Of a stretch of 64,000 bases of DNA, positions 2,325 through 61,194 are shown in pieces. The position numbers were made by a program, and so were the translations under genes. The stretch is from positions 62,001 through 126,000 of the IMG/VR virus record IMGVR_UViG_3300017963_000188; one strand, given 5' to 3'. The notes beneath the pieces are model-generated. The model ran no database searches. It saw nothing but the letters and a program-made list of their open reading frames with translations, and was not told where the DNA came from. How positions within the stretch are numbered: position 1 is the stretch's first letter; every line of letters begins with the position of its first letter.

Positions 2325-3200
2325 ATGCCTAGTCCTGAAATAGCAGAACAAAATAAAGAAATAGCAGAACTTTCAAAACTCACTGGTATCAAACATAATA
2401 CAGGTACTGGTCAGGGAAATGAAGTTCTCTATGTTGATTTTGAAAAACCAGAAAGGATCGGATTCATTGAATTTGGTTTTGATCTCAAAACAGGAGCTTT
2501 TGGTGGTGCCGTGATCTACTACTCAGAAGACAAAGCCTTAGTGATTGAAGACATGCCAGAAGGTGCTTCAACTAAAGAAAAGGCTAGGTGGATTAAGGAT
2601 AAAGTCAACGAATGGACTAGTCAATATTTCGAAGGTTTAAAGTCTTCTTCACAGCTCAGGAAACTGGCTAGAAGCATTATTGGATATCGTATCAAAGACC
2701 TCCCTGACAATGCTTTTGAAGGTCATTACATTGGTTACAAGGGTGAAGATTTCATCAATTTTGATGACACATACCAGTTAGGTCTTGGTCATCCAGCTTT
2801 TGGTGGAGAGCATGAAGAGGATTGGACTGTCAGTGAAGAACTTGAAGAGATTGGAGCTGACACCACTAAACTAAATGCTATCTGGGAAAAACATCTCGGT
2901 AAACTCCATGATGCTTTTATTAAAGATTCTCTATACGATGGGACTACATATCAGGTTGTTCCAAATTTTGATGTATCAGGTTTTGACTATGCTTCACAGG
3001 ATGGTGGGTATTGGGTAGCAAACATTTCTGTTGATTTTGATGCAAAACCAAATCTTGAATCTACTGACATTGACCAAATCACACATCATCTAGATGATGT
3101 GGGATCAAGACTTGTGAGCAGAATGAAAGATTTGGCTACGGAACTTAATAGAGAATTTGACAGGCTTGGTGTGGAATTCAGATCTGAGGTTTGGTCTTAA
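2325..3200 (+). CDS. two-domain hypothetical protein with internal SSQLRKLARSI motif
   Basis: 291-aa ORF, GAGG SD. Confidence 0.8.
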   Translation: MPSPEIAEQNKEIAELSKLTGIKHNTGTGQGNEVLYVDFEKPERIGFIEFGFDLKTGAFGGAVIYYSEDKALVIEDMPEGASTKEKARWIKDKVNEWTSQYFEGLKSSSQLRKLARSIIGYRIKDLPDNAFEGHYIGYKGEDFINFDDTYQLGLGHPAFGGEHEEDWTVSEELEEIGADTTKLNAIWEKHLGKLHDAFIKDSLYDGTTYQVVPNFDVSGFDYASQDGGYWVANISVDFDAKPNLESTDIDQITHHLDDVGSRLVSRMKDLATELNREFDRLGVEFRSEVWS

Positions 3201-3607
3201 TGTATCGTTACGCTGATGAACATGACGATTTCGAGAAGATTTGGGGAGATTGGGATCGTGAACTAAAATCAAGAGGTTTTAGTCTAGCTAAACCCTGGAG
3301 TGGCGAGTGGGAGGTCGAAGGTAGACCTTGGGTGAAGGAACGTGGGAACATCCAGATTTGGGTCTATGTTGTGCCTCAGTGGGATCAGCAAGAAGTCATG
3401 GGTCGTGTGAAGAAACATCATTCAATCTATGGTCACATACAACTAAGACGAGTTCTAGATAGATTTGAACTCAAACCTAGATCACTTAGCAGTCTTCGTA
3501 ATATGAAAAGTAAGGGTCTTGAAAAGGTAGATTACTATCTAGAACAAATGGAAACAGGACTCCCCGATCTTAAAAAGTCCTCTCAGTCTTTTTCTTGGTA
3601 TTTCTGA
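3200..3607 (+). CDS. hypothetical protein with MYRY N-terminus
   Basis: TAATG coupling to upstream gene gives start 3200. Confidence 0.75.
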   Translation: MYRYADEHDDFEKIWGDWDRELKSRGFSLAKPWSGEWEVEGRPWVKERGNIQIWVYVVPQWDQQEVMGRVKKHHSIYGHIQLRRVLDRFELKPRSLSSLRNMKSKGLEKVDYYLEQMETGLPDLKKSSQSFSWYF

Positions 3608-3780
3608 AACACTGTTCTAATATCATTCCCTATAGCTTCCCAGTCACTATGCAGAGCCTCAGCATCTTTCTCCCACCACGGTCTGTTATCTATATTATGG
3701 GAACTGAGGGTGCTACCAAGATCAAGAGTGTGTGCCATTCCTTGCAGAAAGCTTTTCAACATGTTCTTTATATAACGCAT
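3583..3780 (-). CDS. small hypothetical protein
   Basis: 65-aa ORF at end of minus-strand run. Confidence 0.55.
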   Translation of the reverse strand: MRYIKNMLKSFLQGMAHTLDLGSTLSSHNIDNRPWWEKDAEALHSDWEAIGNDIRTVFQKYQEKD

Positions 3781-4057
3781 CTAATCTCTCATTTGCTTTT
3801 CGCATCATTTGGTCTCGTTCATGAGTAGCATCTTCTCTGTAATAGTTTACATCCCATCCACGACTAGTGCAAATCCAGAACTTACCTCCAAATCCAAGTA
3901 GTCCCTGAAATCTCCATTCTGAAACCCCACCCCACAGACAATCATCTTTGATATGATGACTTACAAACATGTCTCTCCACATGTCAGAATCATTTGCACC
4001 ACATTCCTCCACCAACACATCATAAACCTTGTTGGCCATTTCCTTGGTCATTGTCAT
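3722..4057 (-). CDS. hypothetical protein
   Basis: 111 aa, ATGA-coupled; EWRFQGLLGFGGKFW motif. Confidence 0.7.
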   Translation of the reverse strand: MTMTKEMANKVYDVLVEECGANDSDMWRDMFVSHHIKDDCLWGGVSEWRFQGLLGFGGKFWICTSRGWDVNYYREDATHERDQMMRKANERLDALYKEHVEKLSARNGTHS

Positions 4058-4353
4058 GTCACATTCCTTAGTATTTTAACAGGAGTCTTAGAACATATTG
4101 TCCAACCTGGAAGACCTGATTCTACGATCTCTTTTATCGTAGCAAATCTATTATTGGTGTCTACAGGCCAAGGGATGATACCTTCTCTATTTGAATTCTC
4201 ATCCCAAGAGTCTAGATATTCTACTGCTTCTTTCTCTGAAGGGAATGTGCAAGCAGCCGGTTGGCCTACAGAATCAAGTAGTGACCAAAACCCCAATCCC
4301 AAAGCCCCTCCAAGATATACTCCCATCTCTTTATGGTAGAGTACATATCTCAT
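4054..4353 (-). CDS. hypothetical protein
   Basis: 99 aa, coupled to both neighbours. Confidence 0.7.
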   Translation of the reverse strand: MRYVLYHKEMGVYLGGALGLGFWSLLDSVGQPAACTFPSEKEAVEYLDSWDENSNREGIIPWPVDTNNRFATIKEIVESGLPGWTICSKTPVKILRNVT

Positions 4354-4790
4354 GATTCGAGTTCGTTCCTATCCAGTTTGGACATCACTTTGAGGGATGA
4401 TATTATGAAGTTTGTTTCCTCATCTTCTGTTTCTGGCTCAATGATATGACATACTGCTTTTGTATTCTTGATTCTGGTTTGGATGTGTTTTGGAAGTTCT
4501 TTCCATTTCTGACCTTCAAGAGTTGTGAGAAGTTTCAATCCAGTAAGTGGGTATTCTCCTGCAACAAAATCCTTTACGGCACACAAACGTTCAGTCCCCA
4601 TAAGCATTACCATGGGTTCACTCTGACTCATCCTTCTGGCATAAAATGGTGGGAGGGGAATTCTGAGTAAAATGCATTCGATGACTCTGGATCGAATTTG
4701 ATCCAACATGGGAGTCTCATCTGGCAATTTGACATTCTTAATCACAGACCAAACTGTGGTATCTTTACTGGGCATCTTTATATATGGCAT
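4350..4790 (-). CDS. degenerate DUF262 (GmrSD/ParB-like) domain protein
   Basis: SRVIECILLRIPLPPFY and YPLTGLKLL...GQKWKELP; DGxQR replaced by MGTER. Confidence 0.6.
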   Translation of the reverse strand: MPYIKMPSKDTTVWSVIKNVKLPDETPMLDQIRSRVIECILLRIPLPPFYARRMSQSEPMVMLMGTERLCAVKDFVAGEYPLTGLKLLTTLEGQKWKELPKHIQTRIKNTKAVCHIIEPETEDEETNFIISSLKVMSKLDRNELES

Positions 4791-4800
4791 ACATAACTCC

Positions 4801-8477: not shown

Positions 8478-8765
8478 TTATTCAGAAATCTGTACCCAAC
8501 TTTCCCCCTTTTCAAGCCTCCATTTCTCACCATCTTTCTCCAAAGTGACGGTATCAGGACTCAAAAGGTTAGGTGGTTCAAGACCATTACAGAATTCTAG
8601 AAATACTCCTGGGACAATTTCTTGAGTTCCTTCTGGACAGGTGACAAGTTCTCCCAGCATCTTTTCTGCTGTTTCCATTGCCTCTTCCACCCCAAGGGAC
8701 TCTTTGATCTTCACCGACTCTGTTATCTTAGCAGCCAGTTTCCTTAAATGCTCTGATGGTTTCAT
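8478..8765 (-). CDS. hypothetical protein with SEHLRKLAAKI leader
   Basis: 95 aa, GAGGTG SD. Confidence 0.7.
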   Translation of the reverse strand: MKPSEHLRKLAAKITESVKIKESLGVEEAMETAEKMLGELVTCPEGTQEIVPGVFLEFCNGLEPPNLLSPDTVTLEKDGEKWRLEKGESWVQISE

Positions 8766-10352: not shown

Positions 10353-10766
10353 ATGTTAAGTAAAGAACTGAAAAAGATTGCAAAGAACATTAATAACCCC
10401 CCGAAGACTTCTGCCTTCATGGAGCCTGAAATCATCTTGGATGATTGGGTTTCTGTCGATGGTCCTATGGGTGGGGAGTCTACCCCTGCTGAATATATAG
10501 ATCTTGATGAAGTAGCTGAACTTCAGAAAGAGATTGATGAAAAGGGTGAAGTCTCTCTGGAAGGAACTTCATTGAATGACTACTTCGAGAACCGTTCAGC
10601 CTATGAGATTGAAGTCTCCAAGGGATATGGTGCTCGTCTTTCAGCTCCTGGATATATGGATGCCACAGGTTGGTCTGTTTTTGACACTGAGGCAGAGGCC
10701 CGAGAATATCTGATGGAGACATATGACCTAGATGAAAATCTTGAAGAGATTGAAGAAGATTGGTAG
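10353..10766 (+). CDS. acidic hypothetical protein with SKELKKIAKNI leader
   Basis: 137 aa; GARLSAPGYMDATGW motif. Confidence 0.75.
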   Translation: MLSKELKKIAKNINNPPKTSAFMEPEIILDDWVSVDGPMGGESTPAEYIDLDEVAELQKEIDEKGEVSLEGTSLNDYFENRSAYEIEVSKGYGARLSAPGYMDATGWSVFDTEAEAREYLMETYDLDENLEEIEEDW

Positions 10767-11326: not shown

Positions 11327-12004
11327 ATGAAAACAGCAACCATGGAAGAACTTGTTGAAGAATATAGTCTTGATGATTCCCAATCCAAAATCATCAATGA
11401 ATTCCTCGAAGAGCTAGACTTTGAACCTGATGATGTAGATGCTATCGAGGAAGGAGAAGGATATACCAGAGCCGGTATGAGAGTGGAGATTGGGAGTCAA
11501 GAATTCCTGATCTTTGAAGACTATGATGATGCTGAAGAAGAGGCCAAACAAGATGTCCTCAATCTGATTGAAGAGATTGGTCTTGGGGACATGAACTACT
11601 GGCAGCAATTTGTTGATGAAGACAAAGCAGAAAGTTTCTTCCGTGACGTATATATGGAATGGAATTATGGCTATGCTAATGACATCGAGAGTGAGTCTGC
11701 TAGTGATAGTGACTATGACAACCGTCTCGAAGAGGAAATGGCTGAACGTGGTGCCGATGACATGGATGAGTTTGTCGAGATGATGACTGATGAACAAATC
11801 GATGAAGGTGATGGTGGATTTGAATATTACAAAAACAATTTTGGTGAAGAAGAAGCTCAAAAACTTCTCATTGACCAAAACTTGGTTGATATCGATGCCT
11901 ATGCAGAATACTGTGTCAACACCGATGGTGTAGCTCACTTCCTGGGTCGTTACGATGGTAATGAATACGGTGGGTACAGTTGGTATGCTTATCGGCAGAA
12001 CTAG
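11327..12004 (+). CDS. highly acidic hypothetical protein
   Basis: 225 aa, D/E-rich, AGGAG SD, begins MKTA. Confidence 0.8.
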   Translation: MKTATMEELVEEYSLDDSQSKIINEFLEELDFEPDDVDAIEEGEGYTRAGMRVEIGSQEFLIFEDYDDAEEEAKQDVLNLIEEIGLGDMNYWQQFVDEDKAESFFRDVYMEWNYGYANDIESESASDSDYDNRLEEEMAERGADDMDEFVEMMTDEQIDEGDGGFEYYKNNFGEEEAQKLLIDQNLVDIDAYAEYCVNTDGVAHFLGRYDGNEYGGYSWYAYRQN

Positions 12005-13018: not shown

Positions 13019-13585
13019 TTATTTGATCAAAGACCAAAATTCTTCTGGGTCTTTAAGGGATTTAGATTCTAGAATCATCACTGATTTTAGTAGATTAACA
13101 GCTTTCTTTTTACCATCCCATTTAAGTGTGATGAGATTAGTATCTGTGAATTCATAATCTATCGGGTCATCTACATCTAGATTTATAGTGTCTAGGGCAT
13201 CATCAAACCGTAGTTCTAGATCAGTCAGTAACTTCTCCAACTGTTTTCGTGGTACTCCCCAGACAGGATCAGAACCCCAATTTTGTTCTGTAGAAGAAGC
13301 CGATTCAAGCTCTTCCATTGCAGTGTTGAGGTCATCTTTCTTGAGAGCCTTGATTGCAGCATCACCATATTTGGATGCTGATTTAGCATCTTCCTGAACT
13401 CTTCTTGAATACAGCTCAGCTTCTTCTTGCACTTCTTGTGGCATCTCTTCAGTGGCACTTCCTGACCCCTCAAGAAAATATGTCTCTCCATCATGGTCTT
13501 GAAAAGCATTAGCCCAATCCCAATCGGTCCAATCATTTTGTGCTTTTTCTATAGCTGAAATTATTCTATCTACTTCTGGTAGCAT
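13019..13585 (-). CDS. hypothetical protein with EVDRIISAIEKAQ leader
   Basis: 188 aa, AAGGAG SD. Confidence 0.75.
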   Translation of the reverse strand: MLPEVDRIISAIEKAQNDWTDWDWANAFQDHDGETYFLEGSGSATEEMPQEVQEEAELYSRRVQEDAKSASKYGDAAIKALKKDDLNTAMEELESASSTEQNWGSDPVWGVPRKQLEKLLTDLELRFDDALDTINLDVDDPIDYEFTDTNLITLKWDGKKKAVNLLKSVMILESKSLKDPEEFWSLIK

Positions 13586-34297: not shown

Positions 34298-35224
34298 CTA
34301 AAAAATACTTCCGTCTTCATTAAATTCATATTCATTGACCATGATATTTTCATCTACATTCTCATCAGCCATCAACCAATCATATTCTTTTTCAAGAGCT
34401 TGGTAGTAATCTTGAGCATAGTATCGAGCTTGTTCAAGACCCCATTCATTGAGTTCTTCTACTTCTCTTTCAAGAGCCTCATCAAACTTGTCTACTTCAT
34501 CTTCTGACCAGTCATCAGCATCTTCATAATTATCTACAGATGGAGCACGGATGTCGTCACCGTGCATTGTATTTGAATGATAGTAATGCCCAGAATGAGT
34601 GATGTTGAGGTGATAATCCTCATAGTCTTCACCACCCATTTCTTCCATGAGCTTTACAAAAGAAGGGAATTGCTTTTCAGCACCTTCACTATGAATGAGC
34701 TTGAGAAGGTCTACAGAACCTTCCCAGCTTGCACCGTCACCCTGACTAGCAAAACCAGAAAAGTACATCTTGTCAATGTCAAAACCCTTTTTCTCACCAT
34801 CTTCCTTGAACTGCTCTTCAAGAAAATCCCACCACTCGTAATCAAGGGCTCCATCACGCCACCATTCACGAGCCTTATCTTTAGCTTGATCGTCAAGTTC
34901 GTCAAACTTGTAGACCTCTTTTTCAACGGTTCTTGGGAGAGCTACTTTTCTTTGTGACTGATATCTATACATGTTCGACCTCTTTGCTGCCTTGTTGAAA
35001 TACTTTACTGCCTCATCTTCTTTCTTGAAGTAATGACCCCAATAGAAACCATTGCCTTTAGACCATCTCCAGACACCCCAAGGTGATGCTGAAGAGTCAG
35101 AAAAACCTAAGGCATACCATTCCTGACCATCCTTACGTTTCACATTCCTGATATCGTATGCTCCAGCACTGGTTTCCATTCCTGGGGGTAACTGCACTCC
35201 TGCTGCTTTTTTATATCTATACAT
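34298..35224 (-). CDS. two-module hypothetical protein, each module beginning MYRY
   Basis: 308 aa; second module VYKFDELDDQAKDKAREW...NEYEFNEDG; internal SD+ATG at 34972. Confidence 0.85.
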   Translation of the reverse strand: MYRYKKAAGVQLPPGMETSAGAYDIRNVKRKDGQEWYALGFSDSSASPWGVWRWSKGNGFYWGHYFKKEDEAVKYFNKAAKRSNMYRYQSQRKVALPRTVEKEVYKFDELDDQAKDKAREWWRDGALDYEWWDFLEEQFKEDGEKKGFDIDKMYFSGFASQGDGASWEGSVDLLKLIHSEGAEKQFPSFVKLMEEMGGEDYEDYHLNITHSGHYYHSNTMHGDDIRAPSVDNYEDADDWSEDEVDKFDEALEREVEELNEWGLEQARYYAQDYYQALEKEYDWLMADENVDENIMVNEYEFNEDGSIF

Positions 35225-35233: not shown

Positions 35234-35590
35234 CTAGAAAGCACCTGGTTGAAACCAATTTCCAAAATCATGCTTATCAGTGACTTTAAGATGATCTCCC
35301 TCACTTACCTTAGGGAGCTTTTTACGAAGCCTGATACTCTTCATCTCTGACCTTTTACGAGCATTCTGCATCACAATATCAGCTTCTTCTTGATTATCCA
35401 CAGCAATAGCTATATAGCTTCGACCAGGAGCTTTACCCCACCCACTCATAAAGCTGTCGATCATGATGACGTAATTCCAAGGTTGGGTCTTTTTCTTACG
35501 AACATCTTCAATTTCCTGTCCTCTGATTGATCTCCAGGCAACATTCTCTGCTATTTTACTGAAATCCATGATATGTCTCCTATGTACCAA
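35234..35590 (-). CDS. hypothetical protein (FSKIAENVAWRSI leader)
   Basis: 118 aa; MIDSFMSGWG motif. Confidence 0.75.
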   Translation of the reverse strand: MVHRRHIMDFSKIAENVAWRSIRGQEIEDVRKKKTQPWNYVIMIDSFMSGWGKAPGRSYIAIAVDNQEEADIVMQNARKRSEMKSIRLRKKLPKVSEGDHLKVTDKHDFGNWFQPGAF

Positions 35591-35650: not shown

Positions 35651-35941
35651 ATGCAAATCAGTGCTCAATTAAGAAGACTAGCCAAAGAAATATATCAAGT
35701 GCGGTTAAGCCAAGATCTGATAGATCGTTTAGAAGATTGGGTTTTTGGAACCACAGGTTATGTATCTATAATTTTCAATAATTCTAGAAATTACAAAGAC
35801 GTACCTCTGCAATTAGTTCTAGATACAATATCTGAACTTGAGGGGCCTCTTTATCTAAAGAGCCCCACCCTATCTCTATACGAAAAAGATGAGATAAAAG
35901 ATTTGATCCGTCGATTGAAGAGCTATGTACCTATGCAGTAG
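35651..35941 (+). CDS. hypothetical protein with SAQLRRLAKEI leader
   Basis: 96 aa, AAGGAG SD. Confidence 0.7.
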   Translation: MQISAQLRRLAKEIYQVRLSQDLIDRLEDWVFGTTGYVSIIFNNSRNYKDVPLQLVLDTISELEGPLYLKSPTLSLYEKDEIKDLIRRLKSYVPMQ

Positions 35942-39646: not shown

Positions 39647-39811
39647 ATGAAAGCATGGGGAATTGAACATCTAGAAGAATTGAAGCAGGCCCAACAGGTC
39701 CAACCACAGCAACTCCAATTGGAACTTGATGTGCCTACCTATCCTGAGTACGATAATTCTGAAGAGAAATTTGATTCAGAAGTGAGTTTTGAGGTTGATT
39801 TCTCGATCTAA
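39647..39811 (+). CDS. 54-aa acidic protein (below ORF-track cutoff)
   Basis: MKAWGIEHLEELKQ...; cassette and AGGAGG SD. Confidence 0.6.
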   Translation: MKAWGIEHLEELKQAQQVQPQQLQLELDVPTYPEYDNSEEKFDSEVSFEVDFSI

Positions 39812-40143
39812 CGTCTACGAGTCCTACGAACCCTATTTTGCCTAGCCTTACGAGCCTTACGTTTTTTAGCACCCATGATAGCTCTTTGAGCTTCTTGGAC
39901 AGCTTTAGATAGATCTTCAACCTTTCTCAGTTCCTGATCGCTAAGGTCTTGAATCTTGACATCACCCCAACCTTTGAATAGCTCTTCTAGATCTTCACCA
40001 AGATCCTTGAACATTTCAACGTCTTGAGCTTTCTTATTTCTAGCAGTCCTAACTACTTCTGTTGGGATCACCCATTCATTGTCGTGGGACTTGTGAATTT
40101 TACGAGCCCTACGGGGGCTTCGATTATCATTGTAACGGTACAT
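39808..40143 (-). CDS. basic protein with MYRY N-terminus and Arg/Lys tail
   Basis: 111 aa, AAGGAG SD; RNKKAQ; ends RRTRRR. Confidence 0.75.
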   Translation of the reverse strand: MYRYNDNRSPRRARKIHKSHDNEWVIPTEVVRTARNKKAQDVEMFKDLGEDLEELFKGWGDVKIQDLSDQELRKVEDLSKAVQEAQRAIMGAKKRKARKARQNRVRRTRRR

Positions 40144-43381: not shown

Positions 43382-43604
43382 CCTCTCTGAATAATTCTAC
43401 CCCAGCTCGTTCCTTCAAAGCATCTCCCAACATTATCATTGTTGAGGTAGCTTCTGAAAGATGATCTGAAACATCCTGAAGAGCATCATCAATATCGATG
43501 CGTTTAAATTCTCGTGGTAGAGGTACAGAGTCTATAAACTCTTTGGTCTTACGTAACTCTTCAAAGACCTCTTCCAACTTATCATAGACTTCTGAAGGTC
43601 TCAT
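43341..43604 (-). CDS. helical hypothetical protein with C-terminal NVVDRILAR motif
   Basis: ATGA coupling at 43601-04. Confidence 0.7.
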   Translation of the reverse strand: MRPSEVYDKLEEVFEELRKTKEFIDSVPLPREFKRIDIDDALQDVSDHLSEATSTMIMLGDALKERAGVELFREANVVDRILARIDQ

Positions 43605-43887
43605 TTCCACCAGTAGTTCCATCTATTTTTGGTTGTGCCCATACCATCGACAACCTGAGTGAGTTTACTTGTCCATGAGAAAAACTCATTCAGTGTATCT
43701 TCAATCTCACCTTCTAGTCCCTGACGACCAGCTTCAGAAAGTTCTTCTAAAAGTTCCTCAAGTGTGTCTTGAGATTCTTCTAGCTGCCCAATTCCTTCTC
43801 TAGCTTTAGTGATAGCATCATTGAGTTTATTGACATATCCAGACATCTCTGGAAGAGCAGCAGATTTTTTGTTCGATACCGGTACAT
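43601..43887 (-). CDS. helical protein; MYRY start (43887) joins body only via -1 frameshift
   Basis: AGGAGG SD before 43887; A AAA AAT run; track ORF 43601..43846 has no SD. Confidence 0.6.
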
Positions 43888-45693: not shown

Positions 45694-46101
45694 TTAATAG
45701 GTTTTGCGTACAGCAAGACCTTCATTTACAAGGATGTCATTGAGGCAGAACAGGTTTCCTTCGGCATCTATTTTGTAGATCTCTGCTAAGTATCTGCCGT
45801 ATTTTCCTGTTTTATCTTCTATGGTTTTGATCCAAAGGTCAGCATTATAGATATATTCTGAAACTCTAGCAGCAGCTTTCTTCCCTGCTTCATATTCTTC
45901 TGAGCCCTTTTTGACTCCATATGTTTCAGGGGTATCTATCCCATAGAGACGAACTCTTTGTCTAGAAAAAATATTGAGCCCAAGGTCTATCTCTAGATCT
46001 AAGGTGTCTCCATCAACGACACGTACACAGGTAGCTTTGTACCAATAGAGTTTATCTTCATGATTTTCCATAATCATTACTCTTCCATGTATTCTACCCA
46101 C
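45694..46101 (-). CDS. thermonuclease (SNase-like)
   Basis: VVDGDTL, RVRLYGIDTPE, GKYGRYLA, LVNEGLA. Confidence 0.92.
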   Translation of the reverse strand: MGRIHGRVMIMENHEDKLYWYKATCVRVVDGDTLDLEIDLGLNIFSRQRVRLYGIDTPETYGVKKGSEEYEAGKKAAARVSEYIYNADLWIKTIEDKTGKYGRYLAEIYKIDAEGNLFCLNDILVNEGLAVRKTY

Positions 46102-46715
46102 TTCTCTACATCACGCTCCATATCATTGATCTCATGGAGTTCAGCATACTCAAAGACTTGAGCAGCCCTATCTTCAAGATAGGCTTCTTCCCATGCCTGA
46201 TCATAGAATGGGGAGTCATACTGACCAAGCCAGGCAGCCCAGTTCCATTCCTTAGCATCTTCATGCATAGGTGAGTCTGAGAATTGGTAGAAAAGACCTG
46301 AAGGCTCATAGTCTTCAGATTCATCCCCAAGAGATACTGTGACTGTCATTCCCACATAGCCAAGACCAGAATTTACATCCCAAGTCACTTGTACTTCAAC
46401 ATCAGGATGAATGTCTTTAAGGGCATTGAGAACTTCTTCTTTCACTGCTTCAGCAGTCTGGTCAAACTTTTCACTGGTATCCAATTCATAGAAAGTTTCC
46501 ATGCTGCGAGCAAGTTCTTTTTGAACTTCAGGCTTTATGGTGACGAAATCAACCTCATCCTCATCGGTTCTGGTGACTTCAACATCATCCCAAAGGTTGT
46601 ATTCATCCAAGAAAGAGCTATATTCTTCAGTGTCAATCTCTTCACCAAAATCAGGCAAATAGGACTGTGCCTTCTTTGATCGTTCAATAACTCGTGATAT
46701 GAGATCCATTTCCAT
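46077..46715 (-). CDS. acidic hypothetical protein with DLISRVIERSKKAQ leader
   Basis: 212 aa, GAGGAGG SD. Confidence 0.8.
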   Translation of the reverse strand: MEMDLISRVIERSKKAQSYLPDFGEEIDTEEYSSFLDEYNLWDDVEVTRTDEDEVDFVTIKPEVQKELARSMETFYELDTSEKFDQTAEAVKEEVLNALKDIHPDVEVQVTWDVNSGLGYVGMTVTVSLGDESEDYEPSGLFYQFSDSPMHEDAKEWNWAAWLGQYDSPFYDQAWEEAYLEDRAAQVFEYAELHEINDMERDVEKWVEYMEE

Positions 46716-54228: not shown

Positions 54229-54316
54229 TGGTGGGCAGGGAAGGATTCGAACCTCCGTACCCCCGAAGGGGATCGGGTCTACAGCCCGACGCCATTAACC
54301 ACTCGGCCACCTGCCC
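54229..54316 (-). tRNA. trnY: tRNA-Tyr(GUA), second copy
   Basis: loop CTGTAGA, long variable arm, CCA. Confidence 0.93.
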
Positions 54317-54317
54317 T

Positions 54318-55078: not shown

Positions 55079-55119
55079 GGTTCTATACTGAAGAGATCCG
55101 AGATTTTAAATTACTATTT

Positions 55120-55195
<76 letters not shown>

Positions 55196-55324
55196 TTTTA
55201 TTTTCTCCCTTCAAATGCACACACACAGAGATCTCTCCTAGACTCTCTTTCAGCACCAAGATGTAAAGGTACTGGTAGAGTCTTAGCTCTTACTAAACCA
55301 ATATGAGGATTTATTCTTGGGGGA

Positions 55325-55398
55325 GGAGGAAACCACACCAGTGCCTGGCTGAATCTCAGTGGCTACGATGGTAATTGTGTGGTCCATAACGGTCCTCC
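55325..55398 (-). ncRNA. candidate structured RNA
   Basis: nested stems 55325-30/55393-98 and 55332-38/55377-83 in GC-rich intergenic patch. Confidence 0.35.
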
Positions 55399-55492
55399 AT
55401 ATGATGACCTACACTTGACTATACACATAAGGATATTTTTTTGCAAGCAGAAAATAGATTATTTATATTTCTATAGTCTAGAGAGGTGATTC

Positions 55493-56356
55493 ATGATAAT
55501 AAGACCGAAAGATTGGGAAGCTACAAGTGATGAAGCTGTAGATTTCTTGAACTCTATACAAAGACCAAAACACTATTATAGAGGTATGACCGATCAAGAA
55601 TATAAAGCTACGGTCGGTAAAGGTGATCCAGTCCAATCCACAGGAGCTTTCTCTCACAGTTCTGAAGGGACAAATTTCTCAGAATATCCTGCTGATGCTG
55701 AGAGCTATGTAAACTTTGGTCGTGATGACCCAAGAAGAACTGGGAAATCAAATTGGCTTGTAGAAGTAGCAGAAACCCCAACCATGTATCGAGACACTGA
55801 TGGGTACTACAAAGATAAAGAACCTGTAGATACCGTGACAAGGATATGGGAATTTTACCCCGAAGATGGAGCTATCAAGACTAGGAAAGTGAAGGGTAGT
55901 GATATGAGACTAGTGAATCGAGTTGCTCTTAGACATTTGTTTGCTAGATATGCTGATGAAGTTAAAAAAGAGCTGAAATACGATGTCAAGAATATGAAAG
56001 GTGTAGAAACAGTCAAAGAGTACCACAAGGAATTCACCCCTGGGTCACAGAAGGGTGGAGCTTTCCCTGATATGGACTTAATAGAAATGGTATGGGTCGT
56101 TGGTGATGGAGAACAAGGGAACTACACAGTGATGTGTGAACTCTATGTAGAAAAGGGTGGGATCTTACTTCGAGATGAAGGGCCTCAAGAAACCTTTGCA
56201 GGTTCAGTTCGAGGTGAAGCTGCTCTTGGACCTAAGGGAGGGCTTCAATCTGTAAGACAGATCCAAGGTGAAAAGTTCACTGGTAAGCTGGATGAAGTGG
56301 TTGGTAAGTTCGACAAAGCCATTGGTAAAATGATTCAACAACTTGAAGCTATGTAA
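55493..56356 (+). CDS. ART-like N-terminal domain, RLVNRVALR linker, C-terminal domain
   Basis: YYRGM...TNFSEYPADAESY; internal ATG at 55904. Confidence 0.65.
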   Translation: MIIRPKDWEATSDEAVDFLNSIQRPKHYYRGMTDQEYKATVGKGDPVQSTGAFSHSSEGTNFSEYPADAESYVNFGRDDPRRTGKSNWLVEVAETPTMYRDTDGYYKDKEPVDTVTRIWEFYPEDGAIKTRKVKGSDMRLVNRVALRHLFARYADEVKKELKYDVKNMKGVETVKEYHKEFTPGSQKGGAFPDMDLIEMVWVVGDGEQGNYTVMCELYVEKGGILLRDEGPQETFAGSVRGEAALGPKGGLQSVRQIQGEKFTGKLDEVVGKFDKAIGKMIQQLEAM

Positions 56357-56601
56357 TCTTTAGCTTTACTTAATTCTTTTTCCACCACAGGAACCCTCTT
56401 TTTCAATTGATCTATGATTTTATCTTCAGCTTCTTCTATAGATCCCACTGTTTGATCAAAACAATGATGTATACTTGGAACTATTTGTCTTAGATTCCAT
56501 AACTTATGTCCCAGGTCATACTCTATACGGTAAGTCAAATCTAGAAGATTGAATTCATAGCATTGATGCTCTACCGAAACATTTTCCCAATCTAACTTCA
56601 T
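56335..56601 (-). CDS. hypothetical protein
   Basis: 88 aa. Confidence 0.55.
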   Translation of the reverse strand: MKLDWENVSVEHQCYEFNLLDLTYRIEYDLGHKLWNLRQIVPSIHHCFDQTVGSIEEAEDKIIDQLKKRVPVVEKELSKAKDYIASSC

Positions 56602-57492: not shown

Positions 57493-57511
57493 GGCTTTCC
57501 AATCTCAGATA

Positions 57512-57778
57512 CTAAAGAGGTGTGTCAGTTTTGTCAATATTTTCTTTAAGGTGCTTGATTTCTTTACGTTGCTTATCAATTATGGAAATAAGTTCCATGA
57601 GAATATCTCTCATGTATACTCCACCACGACCTGTTACTAGATATATCTTTGCAACATCCCAGCTACTGGCAAATTCACGTAGCTCTTCGATTCGTTTATT
57701 CCTCTTCCCACTCTTCTTGGGCTTTGCTGAGTAGTTCAACGATCCAGAAGAACCTGTCTCTTCTTTCTTTGCAACCAT
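57512..57778 (-). CDS. hypothetical protein
   Basis: 88 aa, overlaps GH19 end; start uncertain. Confidence 0.45.
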   Translation of the reverse strand: MVAKKEETGSSGSLNYSAKPKKSGKRNKRIEELREFASSWDVAKIYLVTGRGGVYMRDILMELISIIDKQRKEIKHLKENIDKTDTPL

Positions 57779-58352
57779 GCATTTTCCCCAGTGCTACTTG
57801 ACGTTGCTTTTGACTCTGATCATACCCTTCACGCCACGGACCAGCGTTAATTATATAGCTGATTTTATCAAAAGCTAAGTAATCAGCATGGCCATTGAGA
57901 TCATGGTCATCCCAATATAGAAGACTAGCAAAGAACCCATGCTCAGGTTGTTCTAGAAGTTCTGGATTCTTTACATAAGCATCAGGGCTATCTACAATCC
58001 CAGCCTCATATGCAGCTTCACTAGCTCTGGTATAATTCTTCAAGCCAGTTGTTTGGATCGGACCCCTACCACAATATTTAGCCCCCATACCACGGGCATT
58101 GTGGCCAAGATCTCCTCTGAAATCGTATTCTTGATAATTGTCATTTCCTGAGTCCCATTCCTTCCACCACCTCAAATCACCAGATTCAAGAGCAAGCTGA
58201 GCCAGAAGACAAGCCATGCGATTGACTGTATTGACTTCAATCCTGAGCATCCCCTCATGAAGATATTTATGATATTCATAGAGTTTATCATCAGGAAGTT
58301 TAGGCATCATTTTTTTAAGTAATTCACTACTGAAATAGGGTGTTAGTTCCAT
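57696..58352 (-). CDS. glycoside hydrolase family 19 (endolysin candidate)
   Basis: LAQLALESG, KYCGRGPIQTTGLKNY, SYIINAG. Confidence 0.88.
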   Translation of the reverse strand: MELTPYFSSELLKKMMPKLPDDKLYEYHKYLHEGMLRIEVNTVNRMACLLAQLALESGDLRWWKEWDSGNDNYQEYDFRGDLGHNARGMGAKYCGRGPIQTTGLKNYTRASEAAYEAGIVDSPDAYVKNPELLEQPEHGFFASLLYWDDHDLNGHADYLAFDKISYIINAGPWREGYDQSQKQRQVALGKMHGCKERRDRFFWIVELLSKAQEEWEEE

Positions 58353-58390
58353 CTTGGACCTCCATTGGTTATTTGTCCTAGATGGATAGC

Positions 58391-58927
58391 TTACTGTGTA
58401 GTATATAATTTTGCAAGGTCAAATGTGGTTCGAGTCACACCATAAACTTCTATATCTGTCCCCATAACAGCAAAAGGTAGGTCTATAATTTCATTTGATC
58501 TATATATTTTCATAGATACTTTCTCTAGACTCAAAAGTTCTATGTTACCATCAAAAAATTCTTCCTGGAAATCATCAATGAAGTATCGGATCTGGTCTCC
58601 TTTATGAAGGGTACGAAGTCTCATCTTTTTTATCTGCACATCCATCTTCTTCCTGAATGGTTCATAATGATACGTATATGGACTCCAGGGTTCATCTAAC
58701 ATTTGACATTCAGAGACATGACAGAGAGGGAATTGATCCTTATTCTCATTTGGTTCTGTGAAGAGGTTAGGCCATTCGATACATTCAGGATCATCACATA
58801 GGAGGCATTGGGCACGGTCTGATTCTGGGGTTGGTTGTATCTCTGCTCTATACTTATTAGACTCCCCTACAAACCCGCTCATAGGTTTCAACCATACCTT
58901 ATCCCCAGGTTTACGTCTCTTGCTCAT
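58391..58927 (-). CDS. hypothetical protein
   Basis: start placed at MSKRRK downstream of tRNA-Gly. Confidence 0.6.
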   Translation of the reverse strand: MSKRRKPGDKVWLKPMSGFVGESNKYRAEIQPTPESDRAQCLLCDDPECIEWPNLFTEPNENKDQFPLCHVSECQMLDEPWSPYTYHYEPFRKKMDVQIKKMRLRTLHKGDQIRYFIDDFQEEFFDGNIELLSLEKVSMKIYRSNEIIDLPFAVMGTDIEVYGVTRTTFDLAKLYTTQ

Positions 58928-58949
58928 ATTGAATCCAAAATAGATGAGT

Positions 58950-59025
58950 TGGAGCGGGGTAGGGGACTCGAACCCCCAACCTGATGCATGGCAAGCACCT
59001 GCTCTACCAATTGAGCTAACCCCGC
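58950..59025 (-). tRNA. trnG: tRNA-Gly(GCC)
   Basis: loop TTGCCAT, U73, CCA. Confidence 0.93.
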
Positions 59026-59243
59026 TGAAAACATTCCTCACATTTGTAGATATGAGGATGTGCAAATTTATGGTTCACCACAGATTTATATTTCATACAC
59101 CAATGACGACCTTTTCTTTTCAATGTGTCCTGCTCATGTTCTGTGGGTGACAAATGATGACAATTTGGAGGACACAGTTTTTTCAAGATATCTGGGTCCA
59201 TCTTTTCAAGTTCTGTGATTGGTATTGAATACATCAGCACCAC
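59016..59243 (-). CDS. Cys-rich protein ending inside tRNA-Gly
   Basis: 75 aa; stop is tRNA nt 8-10. Confidence 0.55.
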   Translation of the reverse strand: MVLMYSIPITELEKMDPDILKKLCPPNCHHLSPTEHEQDTLKRKGRHWCMKYKSVVNHKFAHPHIYKCEECFQRG

Positions 59244-59246
59244 CTC

Positions 59247-59504
59247 TCATGTCTTTTTCCTGAACATAACAAGGTTCCCTATCTCATCTTTAGGGACTCC
59301 TTCATAGTACCCTTCTACAAATTCTTCTAGATCATGTCCCATCATTTCTGCAACTAAAAGTTGTAGAGAAGCTACTTTTTGTAACAAAAATCCAACAGCA
59401 ATAGAATCTCTATTGGTTGGTCCTACTTGTCTCCACACAGCTTCACAATGGTCATCGAGTTCTTTCACCAAGTTTTCAGATTGTTGTCGTATCAAATCTA
59501 TCAT
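59247..59504 (-). CDS. hypothetical protein
   Basis: 85 aa. Confidence 0.55.
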   Translation of the reverse strand: MIDLIRQQSENLVKELDDHCEAVWRQVGPTNRDSIAVGFLLQKVASLQLLVAEMMGHDLEEFVEGYYEGVPKDEIGNLVMFRKKT

Positions 59505-59522
59505 CTCAACACCTTATGTATT

Positions 59523-59598
59523 TGGAGCGGGTGACGGGACTCGAACCCGTAACAACTAGCTTGGAAGGCTAGCGTCCTACCAATTGGACGACACCCGC
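59523..59598 (-). tRNA. trnG: tRNA-Gly(UCC)
   Basis: loop CTTCCAA, CCA. Confidence 0.95.
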
Positions 59599-59763
59599 TT
59601 ATTTATATATACAAAAACCCAATACTTATGGTTTATCTTCCTTCACTTTTTTATATACCGTTGGCTTCCCACACTTCTCACATCTAAGCAGTTTTCCATA
59701 TTCTACTTCAGTGGTATATCTATGAGTACACCACGGACAAGTGACAGAAACCTTGGTTTTCAT

Positions 59764-60219
59764 TCATCTTCCCTTAATATACTCTTCGAACACAATCAAA
59801 TCAATATCAGTTTTTGATCCTATTCCATCTAGAACTTCTTTCACTTTATCCCAATCCAAACCTCCAAGTCCAGCACCTATTCTTGGAAGACCAATAGTCT
59901 TGAGATTTATTTGCTCAGAAGCTCCTACCATCCGTCTCACAGATGCTCTAATTGCATCAAGACGAGCCTTTGTTCTCCACGATACCTGTGTGCCCAAGTT
60001 GAATATGATCGTCCCTTCAGGACTCCTCCAGGCAAATACAGAGCCTAGTTTAAACTCCCTTGCTTTACATCTTCTCCGATACTCCTGATACATCTCAGGA
60101 TATCGTGATCTGAATTCAAGAGCTATGCCTTTCCCCATAGCACCTTCACAATTACATCCATGAGCAATAGCATCTAGGGAGTGATGGAAAAGATCACCAG
60201 AAATGTATTTGACTGACAT
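59764..60219 (-). CDS. macro domain protein (ADP-ribose hydrolase, DarG-like)
   Basis: GDLF, IAHGCNCEGAMGKGIALEF, LPRIGAGLGGLDW; start moved below tRNA-Thr. Confidence 0.92.
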   Translation of the reverse strand: MSVKYISGDLFHHSLDAIAHGCNCEGAMGKGIALEFRSRYPEMYQEYRRRCKAREFKLGSVFAWRSPEGTIIFNLGTQVSWRTKARLDAIRASVRRMVGASEQINLKTIGLPRIGAGLGGLDWDKVKEVLDGIGSKTDIDLIVFEEYIKGR

Positions 60220-60231
60220 CTGCAATCCATT

Positions 60232-60306
60232 TGGAGCCGGTGAGTGGAATTGAACCACCAACCTACTGTTTACGAGACAGTTGCTCTACCGTTGAGCTAC
60301 ACCGGC
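60232..60306 (-). tRNA. trnT: tRNA-Thr(CGU)
   Basis: loop CTCGTAA, CCA. Confidence 0.95.
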
Positions 60307-60599
60307 TATCGATTCTTTTTACGAGACTTCTTAGCTATCTTGTTTTTAGCCCTTCGTTTACGAATCGAGTTTTGATATTGAAGTTCCTTCTGATCTAATC
60401 TAGAAAGCTTCCTGGCAGGTTTTGCCATAGTATCTAGACCTTCTTGGGCTCTTTTGATTTGATTCTCCAACTCTTTTCTAGCCGTCTCAAATTTGGCTTT
60501 TGCAGTCGGATCTTCCAGCTTCTCAATTTCAGCATCCAAATTTTCAATGGCTGCCATGAGTTCTTTCTTCTTCTTTTCTGCAAATTCTCTTCTGTCCAT
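60306..60599 (-). CDS. coiled-coil protein with basic tail
   Basis: ends RRAKNKIAKKSRKKNR; stop G is tRNA G1. Confidence 0.7.
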   Translation of the reverse strand: MDRREFAEKKKKELMAAIENLDAEIEKLEDPTAKAKFETARKELENQIKRAQEGLDTMAKPARKLSRLDQKELQYQNSIRKRRAKNKIAKKSRKKNR

Positions 60600-60666
60600 G
60601 TGCTACCTCCTAACCTATAGTACCCCAGTTATGTTTTTATATACATCATTTTTGTAAGGAGATCCC

Positions 60667-61194
60667 ATGGATATTGTCAGTAGAGTAATCCAACGCTATC
60701 TCAGAGCGTCTAGATACGATACAGATAGTCTTGAGCCTGGTTACATTGGAAAGTACGTGATACATGACCACAGGGCTCAGAACAGGCATTTTGATTTACG
60801 TTTAGAGTTCCCTACCAGCAAGGGAAAAGTTTTCCGTTCCTGGACCATTCCCAAACACACTATTCCCAAAAGTGTAGGTGATAAAGTCCTTGCCACAGAG
60901 ACAGAAGACCACCCAATGAGTTGGGGTGATGTTGTAGATTTTGATGAGACACATGAAATCCCTGAAGGTGAGTATGGTGCTGGTACTGTCAAACTCTATG
61001 ACAAAGGTAAATTTGCTCTCATAGATATGGACTATGATAGTAAGTATGTCTTCAAAATGATTGGTGAGAAACTTGATGGAGTCTGGTCTTTAGTCAAAAC
61101 TGATGGTAAGAACTTCCTTTTGGTACGTTCAAGTGCTGATCAACCAGAACTTGAAGAACCTGAAGTACAAAAAGCGATCAAAAAGTTGGAATAG
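60667..61194 (+). CDS. stand-alone LigD 3'-phosphoesterase domain with DIVSRVIQRYLRA leader
   Basis: HDHRAQNRHFDLRLE, SWTIPK, TEDHP, GEYGAGTV. Confidence 0.88.
   Translation: MDIVSRVIQRYLRASRYDTDSLEPGYIGKYVIHDHRAQNRHFDLRLEFPTSKGKVFRSWTIPKHTIPKSVGDKVLATETEDHPMSWGDVVDFDETHEIPEGEYGAGTVKLYDKGKFALIDMDYDSKYVFKMIGEKLDGVWSLVKTDGKNFLLVRSSADQPELEEPEVQKAIKKLE

What the first reader, a model, noticed from the sequence alone, without database searches (positions are those of the whole stretch)
2325..61194. Candidate capsid-targeting/cargo system: about 15 unrelated proteins share short leader motifs, most with a distinct upstream motif
Seen: three motifs (SxxL[RK][RK][LI]AxxI x4; [VI]xR[VI]xxR x6; MYRY x5) sit at N-termini or between domains of unrelated proteins. 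Several are followed by K/Q-x-A(Q/A) (KKAQ, EKAQ, MQAQ, KKAA, RKVA). Most of these genes have TTTATA-type upstream sites, lack the class A cassette, and several run against the local strand. Cargo includes an Acb1-like/ART fusion, a second ART-like protein, a LigD phosphoesterase and acidic proteins. Established: T4 internal proteins use an N-terminal capsid-targeting sequence removed by the prohead protease. Inference: a modular address tag that loads counter-defence/repair enzymes into the head for co-injection.
Basis: partly seen in the sequence, partly recalled or inferred. Interest (0 to 1): 0.9.

Follow-up and report, generated by a model that had tools for sequence, protein, structure and literature searches.

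The report
Shared leader tags on phage cargo proteins
About a dozen unrelated small proteins of a 358-kb phage G-like jumbo phage carry the same short helical tag or a four-residue MYRY start; the tags are real, modular and found in relatives, and most likely load enzymes into the capsid, which is unproven.

Summary
S..L[RK][RK][LI]A..I occurs 4 times against about 0.01 expected. MYRY occurs 6 times against about 0.2, four of them at ribosome-binding-site-preceded starts. The [VI]xR[VI]xxR pattern is at chance as written, but a refined motif, R-V-[AI]-x-R-[FYH]-L-x-A, is real.

Motifs A and B are one family of amphipathic basic helices. Codons differ between copies, so selection acts on the peptide. 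Tags come and go among orthologs. A relative has the g005 C-domain as a separate protein with the tag at its N-terminus, so internal copies are fusion relics. A distant relative, LR745208, shares none of the cargo but has the motif 11 times against 0.8 expected, mostly N-terminal.

Tagged genes avoid the class A cassette. They carry a TTTAT element that also precedes about half of the virion operons. The phage has a phage G-type capsid. Its prohead protease carries the motif just after the catalytic domain, and scaffold-like proteins have similar helices.

My best reading (about 0.45) is a capsid-core targeting tag analogous to the T4 capsid targeting sequence. No cleavage site or virion presence is shown. 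LigD phosphoesterase and an ADP-ribosyltransferase-fold domain are confirmed; the "Acb1-like/ART" label for g005 is not.

The parts
2325..3200 (+). g005, 291 aa, pI 4.6. It is a fusion of an unknown N-domain (residues 1-105), an internal helix tag (2646-2678, SSQLRKLARSI) and a C-domain.
   Evidence: One search gives the motif. In some searches the relative P0020 (52% identity) is the C-domain alone, starting MTSSILRRLAKNI. No family hit was found.
2277..2285 (+). TATTTATAT promoter-like element (class B) upstream of g005. Identical 9-mers lie at 10299 (g023), 13612 (g029, minus strand), 55460 (g109) and 59600.
   Evidence: the 9-mer occurs 5 times and all 5 copies are intergenic. Searches give the spacing to the ATG.
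3200..3607 (+). g006, 135 aa, starting MYRY (3200-3211). Its ATG overlaps the g005 stop codon.
8478..8765 (-). g021, 95 aa, with an N-terminal helix tag at 8724-8756 (SEHLRKLAAKI).
10353..10766 (+). g023, 137 aa, pI 4.05, with an N-terminal helix tag at 10359-10391 (SKELKKIAKNI).
13019..13585 (-). g029, 188 aa, pI 4.3, with an N-terminal tag-like helix at 13538-13582 (LPEVDRIISAIEKAQ).
   Evidence: One search gives the sequence. One search gives a leave-one-out score of 5.1, the weakest member. RIISA is shared with the upstream-flank copy.
34298..35224 (-). g060, 308 aa, with MYRY at its start (35213-35224) and again at residue 85 (34961-34972). The second copy has its own Shine-Dalgarno-like site. 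The N-domain is a paralogue of g061 and the C-domain a paralogue of g026 (phrog_5162).
35651..35941 (+). g062, 96 aa, with an N-terminal helix tag at 35660-35692 (SAQLRRLAKEI). An ATTTATAA element lies upstream.
39808..40143 (-). g072, 111 aa, basic (pI 10.5), starting MYRY (40132-40143).
43780..43887 (-). A 35-codon ORF starting MYRY behind a strong AAGGAGG site. It overlaps the start of g080 and holds the slippery heptamer A_AAA_AAT (43864-43870), in register for a -1 shift into the g080 frame.
   Evidence: Searches give the sequence. One search shows it is identical in three independent assemblies. The frame arithmetic comes from the sequence itself.
43601..43846 (-). g080, 81 aa, pI 4.4. 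Its N-terminus, SGYVNKLNDAITKA (43802-43843), is the best non-seed match to the tag profile.
   Evidence: 11.9 bits. Its own ATG has no ribosome-binding site.
46077..46709 (-). g085, 210 aa, pI 4.05, with an N-terminal tag at 46665-46709 (MDLISRVIERSKKAQ).
   Evidence: The 53%-identical orthologue P0018 lacks the helix and starts MNKRAYLPDF.
55493..56356 (+). g109, 287 aa. It has an ART-fold N-domain (55493-55900), an internal tag helix (55907-55972, MRLVNRVALRHLFARY) and an unknown C-domain.
   Evidence: Searches found 191 homologues of the N-domain only, within polyvalent proteins. Searches give the models. One search gives the fold match.
60667..61194 (+). g118, 175 aa, with an N-terminal tag at 60667-60711 (MDIVSRVIQRYLRASR) followed by a LigD 3'-phosphoesterase domain.
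   Evidence: One search gives the Pfam hit; orthologues at 62-71% identity keep the tag or have MYRY, and homologues at 44% identity start directly at the domain.
11327..12004 (+). g026, 225 aa, pI 4.05. It is an untagged acidic paralogue of the g060 C-domain and has a CCTTTTTATAT element upstream (TTTAT at 11276-11280).
35234..35569 (-). g061, 111 aa, a paralogue of the g060 N-domain. Its tail, MKSIRLRKKLPKV, aligns with the internal MYRYQSQRKVALP of g060.

Best explanation
The window is an accessory, tRNA-rich island of a 358-kb jumbo phage with a phage G-type capsid.

A set of small genes here are mostly single-gene units with their own TTTAT-type promoter-like element. Their products begin with a short amphipathic basic helix, in two forms: [ST]-x-x-phi-[RK]-[RK]-phi-A-x-x-phi, and R-V-[AI]-x-R-[FYH]-L-x-A. 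Others begin with the minimal form MYRY.

I propose that this peptide is a prohead-targeting tag. During head assembly it would dock onto the scaffold or core, mimicking a helix that the scaffold-like proteins and the prohead protease themselves carry. The attached cargo would then be enclosed in the capsid and enter the next host together with the DNA. The cargo includes a LigD-type phosphoesterase, an ART-fold domain, acidic proteins and, in a relative, a 2H phosphoesterase. This is the same logic as the T4 capsid targeting sequence.

Shown: the motif is non-random and N-terminal. Selection acts on the peptide. The tag is modular among orthologues and recurs on different cargo across the clade. 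Tagged genes are linked to a distinct upstream element. The motif is present in head-module proteins.

Inferred: the tag binds the prohead core, the genes are expressed late, the cargo is packaged and ejected, and the tag may be removed proteolytically.
For: 1. The motifs are non-random. A occurs 4 times against 0.006-0.02 expected, and MYRY 6 times against about 0.2. Two further N-terminal A copies lie in the unseen 8-kb flank.
2. A and B form one family. Leave-one-out profile scores are 5-14 bits against a proteome 99.9th percentile of 7.9. Eight of 11 members lie within the first 5 residues.
3. Selection acts on the peptide: synonymous codon families differ between copies.
4. The tag is modular.
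   - g118 orthologues at 62-71% identity keep the helix or have MYRY, while 44%-identity homologues lack any leader.
   - The g085 orthologue lacks the helix.
   - The g005 C-domain exists in a relative as a separate protein with the tag at its N-terminus.
5. The motif is clade-wide on different cargo. LR745208 (capsid protein 79% identical, GC 55%) shares 8 of 123 window proteins and none of the cargo. It has the motif 11 times against 0.8 expected, 7 of them within the first 25 residues. One tagged protein there is a 2H/Acb1-like phosphoesterase.
6. There are links to the head.
   - The prohead protease has NLRRVASRIVLA right after its catalytic domain (15.9 bits, above every non-seed hit in the window). 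A 58%-identical relative keeps QRVASRLILAQPP at the same place.
   - The scaffold-like proteins of both phages have C[VI][KR]IA..ML.
   - The protein just upstream of the protease has ARKVASNMLGR.
7. The promoter evidence fits. Tagged genes carry the TTTAT element (p = 1.6e-5) and never class A. [TA]TTTAT occurs at -22..-70 in 8 of 15 virion-block upstream regions in sense and 0 of 15 in antisense. That block holds the capsid protein, protease, sheath and tail terminator.
8. The cargo types fit virion-delivered effectors. The g109 N-domain family sits in MuF-containing polyvalent proteins (PMC5512222).
9. There is a precedent. In T4, 10 N-terminal residues suffice for targeting, on diverse internal proteins and on the ADP-ribosyltransferase Alt (PMC9026906, PMC3012670).
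Against: - There is no proteomic, transcript or structural evidence that any tagged protein is in virions.
- Cargo proteins are strongly acidic (pI 4.0-4.7), unlike the basic T4 internal proteins. That is awkward next to packed DNA.
- Tags also occur internally, in tandem and at a C-terminus in LR745208, which a strictly N-terminal cleaved signal does not predict.
- The protease motif is not conserved in LR745208 or in more distant relatives, which have only [RQL]KAA[ASG] at that column.
- A weight matrix built from the window's class B sites scores virion-gene sites only 5-9.6, against a null 95th percentile of 7.0. The two site sets share a core but are not shown to be one promoter class.
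- No consistent cleavage motif follows the tags.
- MYRY is only 4 residues long.
- No tagged genes were seen in about 50 kb of the structural region.
- The two more distant relative loci examined (27 kb) had no extra tags.
Confidence: 0.45

Rival explanations
1. The tag is a docking helix for a hub that is not the capsid. The partner could be an AAA+ unfoldase or protease that times the turnover of the proteins (an N-terminal degron), a chaperone, or a host or phage complex on which these proteins act.
For: - The tags are short amphipathic basic helices at N-termini.
- Internal, tandem and C-terminal copies in LR745208 look like typical short linear docking motifs.
- The genes sit in an accessory island among early-type genes.
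- The cargo is acidic.
- Phage G, the cultured relative, encodes ClpP and ClpX (PMC12484599).
Against: - The motif also occurs in the prohead protease and in scaffold-like proteins.
- Tagged genes never use the class A cassette and share a TTTAT core with virion operons.
- No candidate hub was identified.
Confidence: 0.22
2. The motif is mainly a recognition or cleavage site for the prohead protease or another phage protease. On this reading the sites mark junctions of polyprotein-like fusions, and the enzyme's own propeptide junction, rather than serving as an address.
For: - The motif lies at domain junctions in g005, g109 and g060, and three times in one LR745208 protein.
- In the protease family the same column, between the catalytic domain and a variable linker, carries RVASR or [RQL]KAA[ASG]. 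This resembles the C-terminal autocleavage of SPN3US gp245 (PMC10052503).
- KAQ and KKA are enriched near N-termini.
Against: - Most copies are at the extreme N-terminus, where cleavage would release only a few residues.
- Internal copies are explained by gene fusion, since the relative has the tag at a free N-terminus.
- No common scissile motif is evident.
- This rival overlaps with the best explanation, because T4 capsid targeting sequences are both address and cleavage site.
Confidence: 0.13
3. The shared 5' ends are evolutionary baggage. Promoter, ribosome-binding site and first codons would move together as a cassette by recombination, and the peptide itself would have no function.
For: - Tagged genes share an upstream element, and many are single-gene units against the local strand.
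- The tag is present or absent among orthologues.
- Upstream 'tttgctctaga' is conserved with a relative.
Against: - Copies differ at synonymous sites, including switches between Ser and Arg codon families, while the peptide is kept.
- Spacing between the element and the ATG varies from 26 to 47 nt.
- The motif persists in a relative with 55% GC on unrelated genes.
- MYRY genes such as g006 and g060 lack an upstream promoter of their own.
Confidence: 0.1
4. The similarities arise by chance or from composition: generic amphipathic helices picked out after the fact.
For: - N-terminal 25-mers as a whole are no more similar to each other than internal segments are.
- The K-x-A pattern was chosen post hoc.
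Against: - A and MYRY exceed expectation by 20- to 700-fold.
- They replicate in unseen flanking DNA and in orthologues.
- They replicate in a separate genome, 11 against 0.8.
Confidence: 0.03

Closest known systems
Phage T4 capsid targeting sequence (CTS) on internal proteins IPI-III and Alt
   Same: In both cases a short N-terminal peptide is shared by otherwise unrelated, fast-evolving proteins, including an ADP-ribosyltransferase. The genes are dispersed in variable regions. The peptide is modular and transferable. The prohead protease itself may be targeted by propeptides (PMC9026906, PMC3012670).
   Different: - The sequences are unrelated.
- The capsid here is phage G-type (PDB 6wkk, E = 1e-62) with a different protease family (phrog_18299, no T4-type hit).
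- No L/I-x-E-type cleavage site is seen.
- The cargo is mostly acidic rather than basic.
- Internal, tandem and C-terminal copies exist.
- Packaging is not demonstrated.
Head propeptides and ejection proteins of phiKZ-like giant phages (phiKZ, 201phi2-1, SPN3US)
   Same: Both are jumbo phages with many non-shell head proteins. N-terminal propeptides of 20-250 residues are removed by the prohead protease. The protease carries a C-terminal propeptide (PMC10052503).
   Different: Those propeptides are defined by an A/S/G-x-E cleavage motif, not by a shared helix. They belong to paralogous head protein families. No homology to those proteins was found here.
Polyvalent proteins and MuF- or portal-fused effectors of phages
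   Same: The g109 N-domain family occurs in MuF-containing multidomain proteins next to ART-PolyVal, topoisomerase IB and GNAT domains. ART and 2H phosphoesterase domains are typical delivered effectors (PMC5512222).
   Different: Here the effectors are small separate proteins with a short peptide tag. They are not fused to a MuF or portal anchor in one giant polypeptide.
Encapsulin cargo-loading peptides (from my own knowledge, not tested here)
   Same: Short terminal peptides on diverse enzymes bind the interior of an HK97-fold shell.
   Different: Encapsulins are cellular nanocompartments, and their peptides are usually C-terminal and Gly/Ser/Leu-rich. There is no sequence relation.
Phage P1 Dar anti-restriction proteins packed in the head (from my own knowledge; PMC9024508 was listed but not read)
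   Same: Anti-defence proteins are incorporated into heads during morphogenesis and injected, with an N-terminal region needed for incorporation.
   Different: In P1 there are a few large proteins with ordered, dependent incorporation, and no shared short tag across many cargo proteins.

Membership tests
T4-type CTS / internal protein system | A short N-terminal peptide shared by otherwise unrelated proteins | tested here: met
   The cargo proteins show no mutual similarity beyond the tag.
T4-type CTS / internal protein system | Sequence similarity to the T4 CTS and an L/I-x-E site cut by a gp21-type protease | tested here: not met
   The tags have a different consensus, and no consistent x-x-E site follows them. 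The protease matches phrog_18299 and has no Pfam hit.
T4-type CTS / internal protein system | Tagged proteins are present in the prohead core and virion and are ejected | not testable with these tools
   This needs virion proteomics. No supplementary proteomics tables are held for phage G.
T4-type CTS / internal protein system | Late expression together with head genes | tested here: inconclusive
   The TTTAT core is shared with 8 of 15 virion-block upstream regions. The weight matrix from the window sites scores those regions only near the null 95th percentile. No transcript data are available.
phiKZ/SPN3US-type head propeptides | [A/S/G]-x-E cleavage motif at the propeptide boundary | tested here: not met
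   No such conserved boundary follows the tags. The published motif is in PMC10052503.
Polyvalent / MuF-anchored effectors | The effector domain is fused to a MuF or portal domain, or lies within a protein of many domains | tested here: not met
   g109 has 287 aa and no MuF domain. Only its N-domain is homologous to modules of such proteins.
ADP-ribosyltransferase fold (g109 N-domain) | ART fold with conserved Arg, Ser and Glu positions | tested here: met
   The model has pLDDT 94. The Foldseek top hits are catalytic subunits of AB5-type ADP-ribosylating toxins (probability 0.98-0.99, E = 0.015, TM about 0.5, 12-14% identity), followed by PltA and PARP16. R30, S49 and S54 are invariant and E91 nearly invariant across 40 homologues. 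Catalysis was not tested. Pfam gives no hit.
LigD 3'-phosphoesterase (g118) | Match to PF13298 above the gathering score, with conserved His/Asp/Arg positions | tested here: met
   75.7 bits against a cut-off of 31.1. H35, H41, D43, R45 and H82 are invariant in the alignment.
Acb1 / 2H phosphoesterase (claimed for g005) | Match to a 2H/Acb1 profile, with two H-x-[ST] motifs | tested here: not met
   g005 or its halves give no hit in Pfam at E <= 1, in PHROGs or in PDB sequences. A genuine 2H/Acb1-like tagged protein does exist in LR745208.
Phage G-like jumbo phages | Major capsid protein homologous to phage G gp27 | tested here: met
   PDB 6wkk E = 1e-62. tblastn to phage G gives 38% identity, Tunturi_5 46% and LR745208 79%. 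The sheath, protease and tail terminator match Tunturi_5.

The most novel reading that the evidence does not exclude
Phage G-like megaphages may use a short helix that copies a helix of their own scaffold, core proteins and protease as a general cargo-loading peptide. Any gene that acquires about 10-15 codons, or the minimal MYRY start, would have its product loaded into the capsid and co-injected. This would give a rapidly exchangeable, pre-made anti-defence and repair kit. Gene fusions and a -1 frameshift (the MYRY ORF into g080) would modulate which products are tagged.
Probability: 0.35. Interest if true: 0.8.

Novelty: new variant of a known kind. Interest (0 to 1): 0.62.

Why it matters
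If the tag is a capsid address, it would be the second sequence-defined cargo-loading signal in tailed phages, after the T4 capsid targeting sequence. It would be the first in the phage G lineage of megaphages.

It would explain how very large capsids are stocked with enzymes. It would allow injected proteins to be predicted from sequence in uncultured huge phages. It would also offer a short tag for loading foreign proteins into large capsids.

Even without that function, the finding stands on its own. It is a conserved, modular N-terminal peptide on fast-turnover accessory genes with their own promoter-like class.

Tried and rejected
- Megablast of 20 kb against phage records found nothing.
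- PHROGs, Pfam and PDB sequence searches gave nothing for most tagged proteins.
- I tried to sample the rest of the genome with the class A cassette pattern. It matched only the 4 window copies, nowhere else in the 358-kb contig or in IMG/VR.
- Foldseek with the full g109 model gave no useful hit until the N-domain was modelled alone.
- I considered a halophile-type acidic proteome as the cause of the acidic cargo. The proteome median pI is 5.8, so I rejected it.
- I considered an archaeal TATA box and leaderless mRNAs for the TTTATA element. I rejected this because Shine-Dalgarno sites lie between the element and the ATG, and the CCA-adding enzyme and other genes are bacterial in type.
- I considered reading the element as T4's late TATAAATA on the opposite strand. 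For g005 and g023 that would point antisense into the upstream gene.
- I considered an assembly error for the MYRY/g080 frame break. Three assemblies are identical, so I rejected it.
- Phage G virion proteomics could not be used, because no supplementary tables are held.

Full report
**Source and setting**

The window is bases 62,001-126,000 of IMGVR_UViG_3300017963_000188, a 358,038-bp viral contig. Identical stretches occur in several other assemblies.

It has 40% GC and 28 tRNA genes. I called about 123 mostly small genes, most on the minus strand. No phage record matches at the DNA level.

By jumping through a relative's protein I reached the structural region of the same genome, at contig positions about 208-242 kb.
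- The major capsid protein matches phage G gp27 (PDB 6wkk, E = 1e-62; phrog_2522).
- Next to it lie a head maturation protease (phrog_18299), a scaffold-like protein and a decoration-like protein.
- A 1407-aa tail sheath, a tail terminator and a minor tail protein match Tunturiibacter phage Tunturi_5.
- The closest records by capsid protein are LR745208 (485 kb, 79% identity, GC 55%), Tunturi_5 (46%) and phage G (38%).

The phage is therefore a new member of the phage G-like jumbo phages.

Motif A occurs four times, only in real ORFs, and three copies sit at residues 3-5. The expectation is 0.006-0.02. The 8 kb upstream of the window holds two more N-terminal copies.

MYRY occurs six times against about 0.2 expected. 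Three copies start called genes, against 0.009 expected. A fourth starts a short ORF behind a strong ribosome-binding site.

Motif B as written is at chance, 9 hits against 6-11 expected. Even so, g085 and g118 form the top-scoring N-terminal pair of all gene pairs.

Codons differ between copies, including switches of Ser and Arg codon family. What is conserved is therefore the peptide and not the DNA.

**One family, not three**

A copy in the flank, SDQLRIISAKI, bridges A (S..LRKLA..I) and B (g029 VDRIISAIE). A profile built from ten copies gives leave-one-out scores of 5-14 bits, against a proteome 99.9th percentile of 7.9. The best new hit is again an N-terminus, that of g080.

MYRY is tied to the same system. 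In the alignment of g118 orthologues, the MYRY start of one orthologue lines up with the ..QRY and ..SRY end of the helix in the others.

**The tag is modular**

- g118 (LigD phosphoesterase, PF13298): orthologues at 62-71% identity keep a helix or have MYRY. Homologues at 44% identity begin directly at the enzyme domain.
- g085: a 53%-identical orthologue starts MNKRAYLPDF, where ours has MDLISRVIERSKKAQSYLPDF.
- g005: a 52%-identical relative is only the C-domain and starts MTSSILRRLAKNI, behind a conserved upstream sequence. The internal tag in g005 is therefore a relic of fusion with a new N-domain.
- The second MYRY in g060 has its own Shine-Dalgarno-like site. The tag in g109 begins with a Met exactly where homology of the N-domain ends.

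**Conservation across the clade on different cargo**

LR745208 shares only 8 of 123 window proteins, and none of the tagged ones. Yet the pattern [RKQ][VI][AIV].[RK][FYHILMA][LIFA].[AS] occurs 11 times against 0.8 in shuffles. Seven copies lie within the first 25 residues. Others are internal or tandem at a C-terminus. One tagged protein there is a 2H/Acb1-like phosphoesterase with three copies of the motif.

**Upstream elements**

Two classes are clear.

Class A reads AAAAATCTG-N8-TC[AG]GTATAGAA-N4-6-TAGGAGGTGA. In its strict form it is confined to this island.

Class B has a TTTAT core. The exact 9-mer TATTTATAT occurs five times, always intergenic. The TTTAT core ends 26-28 nt from the ATG in four genes (g109, g118, g062, g029).

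Tagged genes carry class B in 7 of 12 cases against 5 of 98 for other genes (p = 1.6e-5). They never carry class A, and they are enriched on the plus strand.

In the virion block, [TA]TTTAT lies at -22..-70 upstream of 8 of 15 genes with a spacer, and in 0 of 15 on the antisense strand. However, a matrix trained on the window sites scores those regions only around the null 95th percentile. The core is shared, but the two sets are not shown to be one promoter class, and timing is inferred only.

**Links to the head**

- The prohead protease carries NLRRVASRIVLA directly after its catalytic domain. It scores 15.9 bits, while the highest non-seed hit in the window is 11.9.
- A 58%-identical protease keeps QRVASRLILAQPP there. 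More distant ones, including LR745208, have only [RQL]KAA[ASG] at that column, before a variable acidic linker.
- The scaffold-like proteins of both phages share C[VI][KR]IA..ML.
- The protein upstream of our protease has ARKVASNMLGR.
- The capsid protein N-arm, GRQKLAASMIQ, resembles A-type tags. This last point is weak.

**Cargo**

- g118 is a LigD-type phosphoesterase.
- The g109 N-domain (residues 1-135) has 191 homologues. Many are modules of very long proteins with MuF, ART-PolyVal, topoisomerase IB or GNAT domains.
- Modelled alone, the g109 N-domain has pLDDT 94. Its nearest solved folds are catalytic subunits of AB5-type ADP-ribosylating toxins, then PltA and PARP16 (probability 0.98-0.99, TM about 0.5, 12-14% identity). 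Arg and Ser positions are invariant and one Glu (E91) is nearly invariant. The similarity is at the fold level only.
- g005 has no detectable family.
- The g060 C-domain is phrog_5162 and is paralogous to g026. Its N-domain is paralogous to g061.
- Eight of 14 proteins in the set have pI 4.0-4.7, while the proteome median is 5.8.

**Interpretation**

The pattern has five parts.
- A short peptide is shared by unrelated, quickly exchanged proteins.
- Selection acts on the peptide.
- It sits at free N-termini unless a fusion buried it.
- It is linked to a non-early upstream element.
- It is echoed in the protease and in scaffold-like proteins.

The pattern closely parallels the T4 capsid targeting sequence. 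In T4, 10 residues suffice for targeting, the cargo is diverse and includes the ADP-ribosyltransferase Alt, and the protease may be targeted the same way (PMC9026906, PMC3012670). ART and 2H domains are classic virion-delivered effector domains (PMC5512222).

I therefore rank capsid-core targeting first, at about 0.45. Several things weigh against it: the acidic cargo, the internal, tandem and C-terminal copies, the absence of a common cleavage motif, the non-conserved protease motif in LR745208, and the complete lack of proteomic or timing data.

The rivals are a docking helix for another hub such as an unfoldase (0.22), a protease site (0.13, overlapping the first), a hitch-hiking 5' cassette (0.10) and chance (0.03).

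KAQ is enriched near N-termini, and a K-A-A element lies at the protease domain junction in relatives.

**Verdict**

The feature is real and statistically robust. It is probably a new sequence variant of a known strategy, peptide-addressed loading of effectors into capsids, in a lineage where that has not been described. Its function remains unproven.

Noticed in passing
window 43780-43887 (-) and 43601-43846 (-): This is a candidate programmed -1 frameshift. A MYRY-initiated 35-codon ORF with a strong ribosome-binding site overlaps g080, whose own ATG has none. The heptamer A_AAA_AAT (43864-43870) is in register. The shifted product would read MYRYRTKKSAALPEM-SGYV.., which resembles the g060 start MYRYKKAAGVQLPPGM. 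The sequence is identical in three assemblies.
   Followed up: partly
whole window: The palindrome TCTAGA occurs 76 times, twice as often as any other palindromic hexamer (the next has 37). It occurs inside genes as well as between them and often flanks class B sites. It might be a regulator site or a modification or restriction-related signal.
   Followed up: no
window, e.g. 40248-40290, 41672-41712, 42389-42430, 55065-55107 (-): The class A cassette reads AAAAATCTG-N8-TCAGTATAGAA-N4-5-TAGGAGGTGA. It is a long promoter-plus-ribosome-binding-site unit in front of about 20 genes. In its strict form it is found only in this part of the 358-kb contig and nowhere else in IMG/VR.
   Followed up: partly
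window 30241-34056 and 48980-63801: There are 28 tRNA genes, all on the minus strand. They include a run of six tRNA-Leu genes with six different anticodons, plus a second tRNA-Leu(tag) copy at 30241-30326. They are interleaved with the tagged genes.
   Followed up: no
L013:12641-13633 (contig about 233.4 kb): An actin-like protein with a strong match to Pfam Volactin (E = 9e-70) sits inside the tail gene block. The more distant relative L005 also has it, next to the MYRY-LigD gene.
   Followed up: no
L013:15549-19772: The tail sheath protein has 1407 aa. It is homologous at both ends to the 1204-aa sheath of Tunturi_5, with a large middle insert that holds flagellin-IN and DUF2460-like stretches.
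   Followed up: partly
L015:435-1940: The prohead protease has 501 aa. A cysteine-rich insert sits in the catalytic domain. It is followed by a long acidic linker and a conserved C-terminal helical region, possibly a fused scaffold- or anchor-like part.
   Followed up: partly
window 34298-35569 and 11327-12004: This is a small paralogue family. g061 matches the g060 N-domain, and g026 matches the g060 C-domain (phrog_5162, very acidic). It shows domain shuffling among these accessory genes.
   Followed up: partly
window 59764-60219 (g116), 45694-46077 (g084), 42433-43005 (g077): Precomputed Pfam hits on identical contigs list a Macro domain, a staphylococcal-nuclease-like domain and a phage-integrase-type recombinase near the tagged genes.
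   Followed up: no
window 8860-10293 (g022) and 38538-39548 (g070): These two proteins are among the few in the window that are conserved in LR745208 (about 51-53% identity). There they are adjacent and lie directly downstream of a tagged 454-aa protein.
   Followed up: no
L011:891-1481: In the relative that carries the stand-alone tagged homologue of the g005 C-domain, the next gene looks like a peroxiredoxin of the AhpC type.
   Followed up: no
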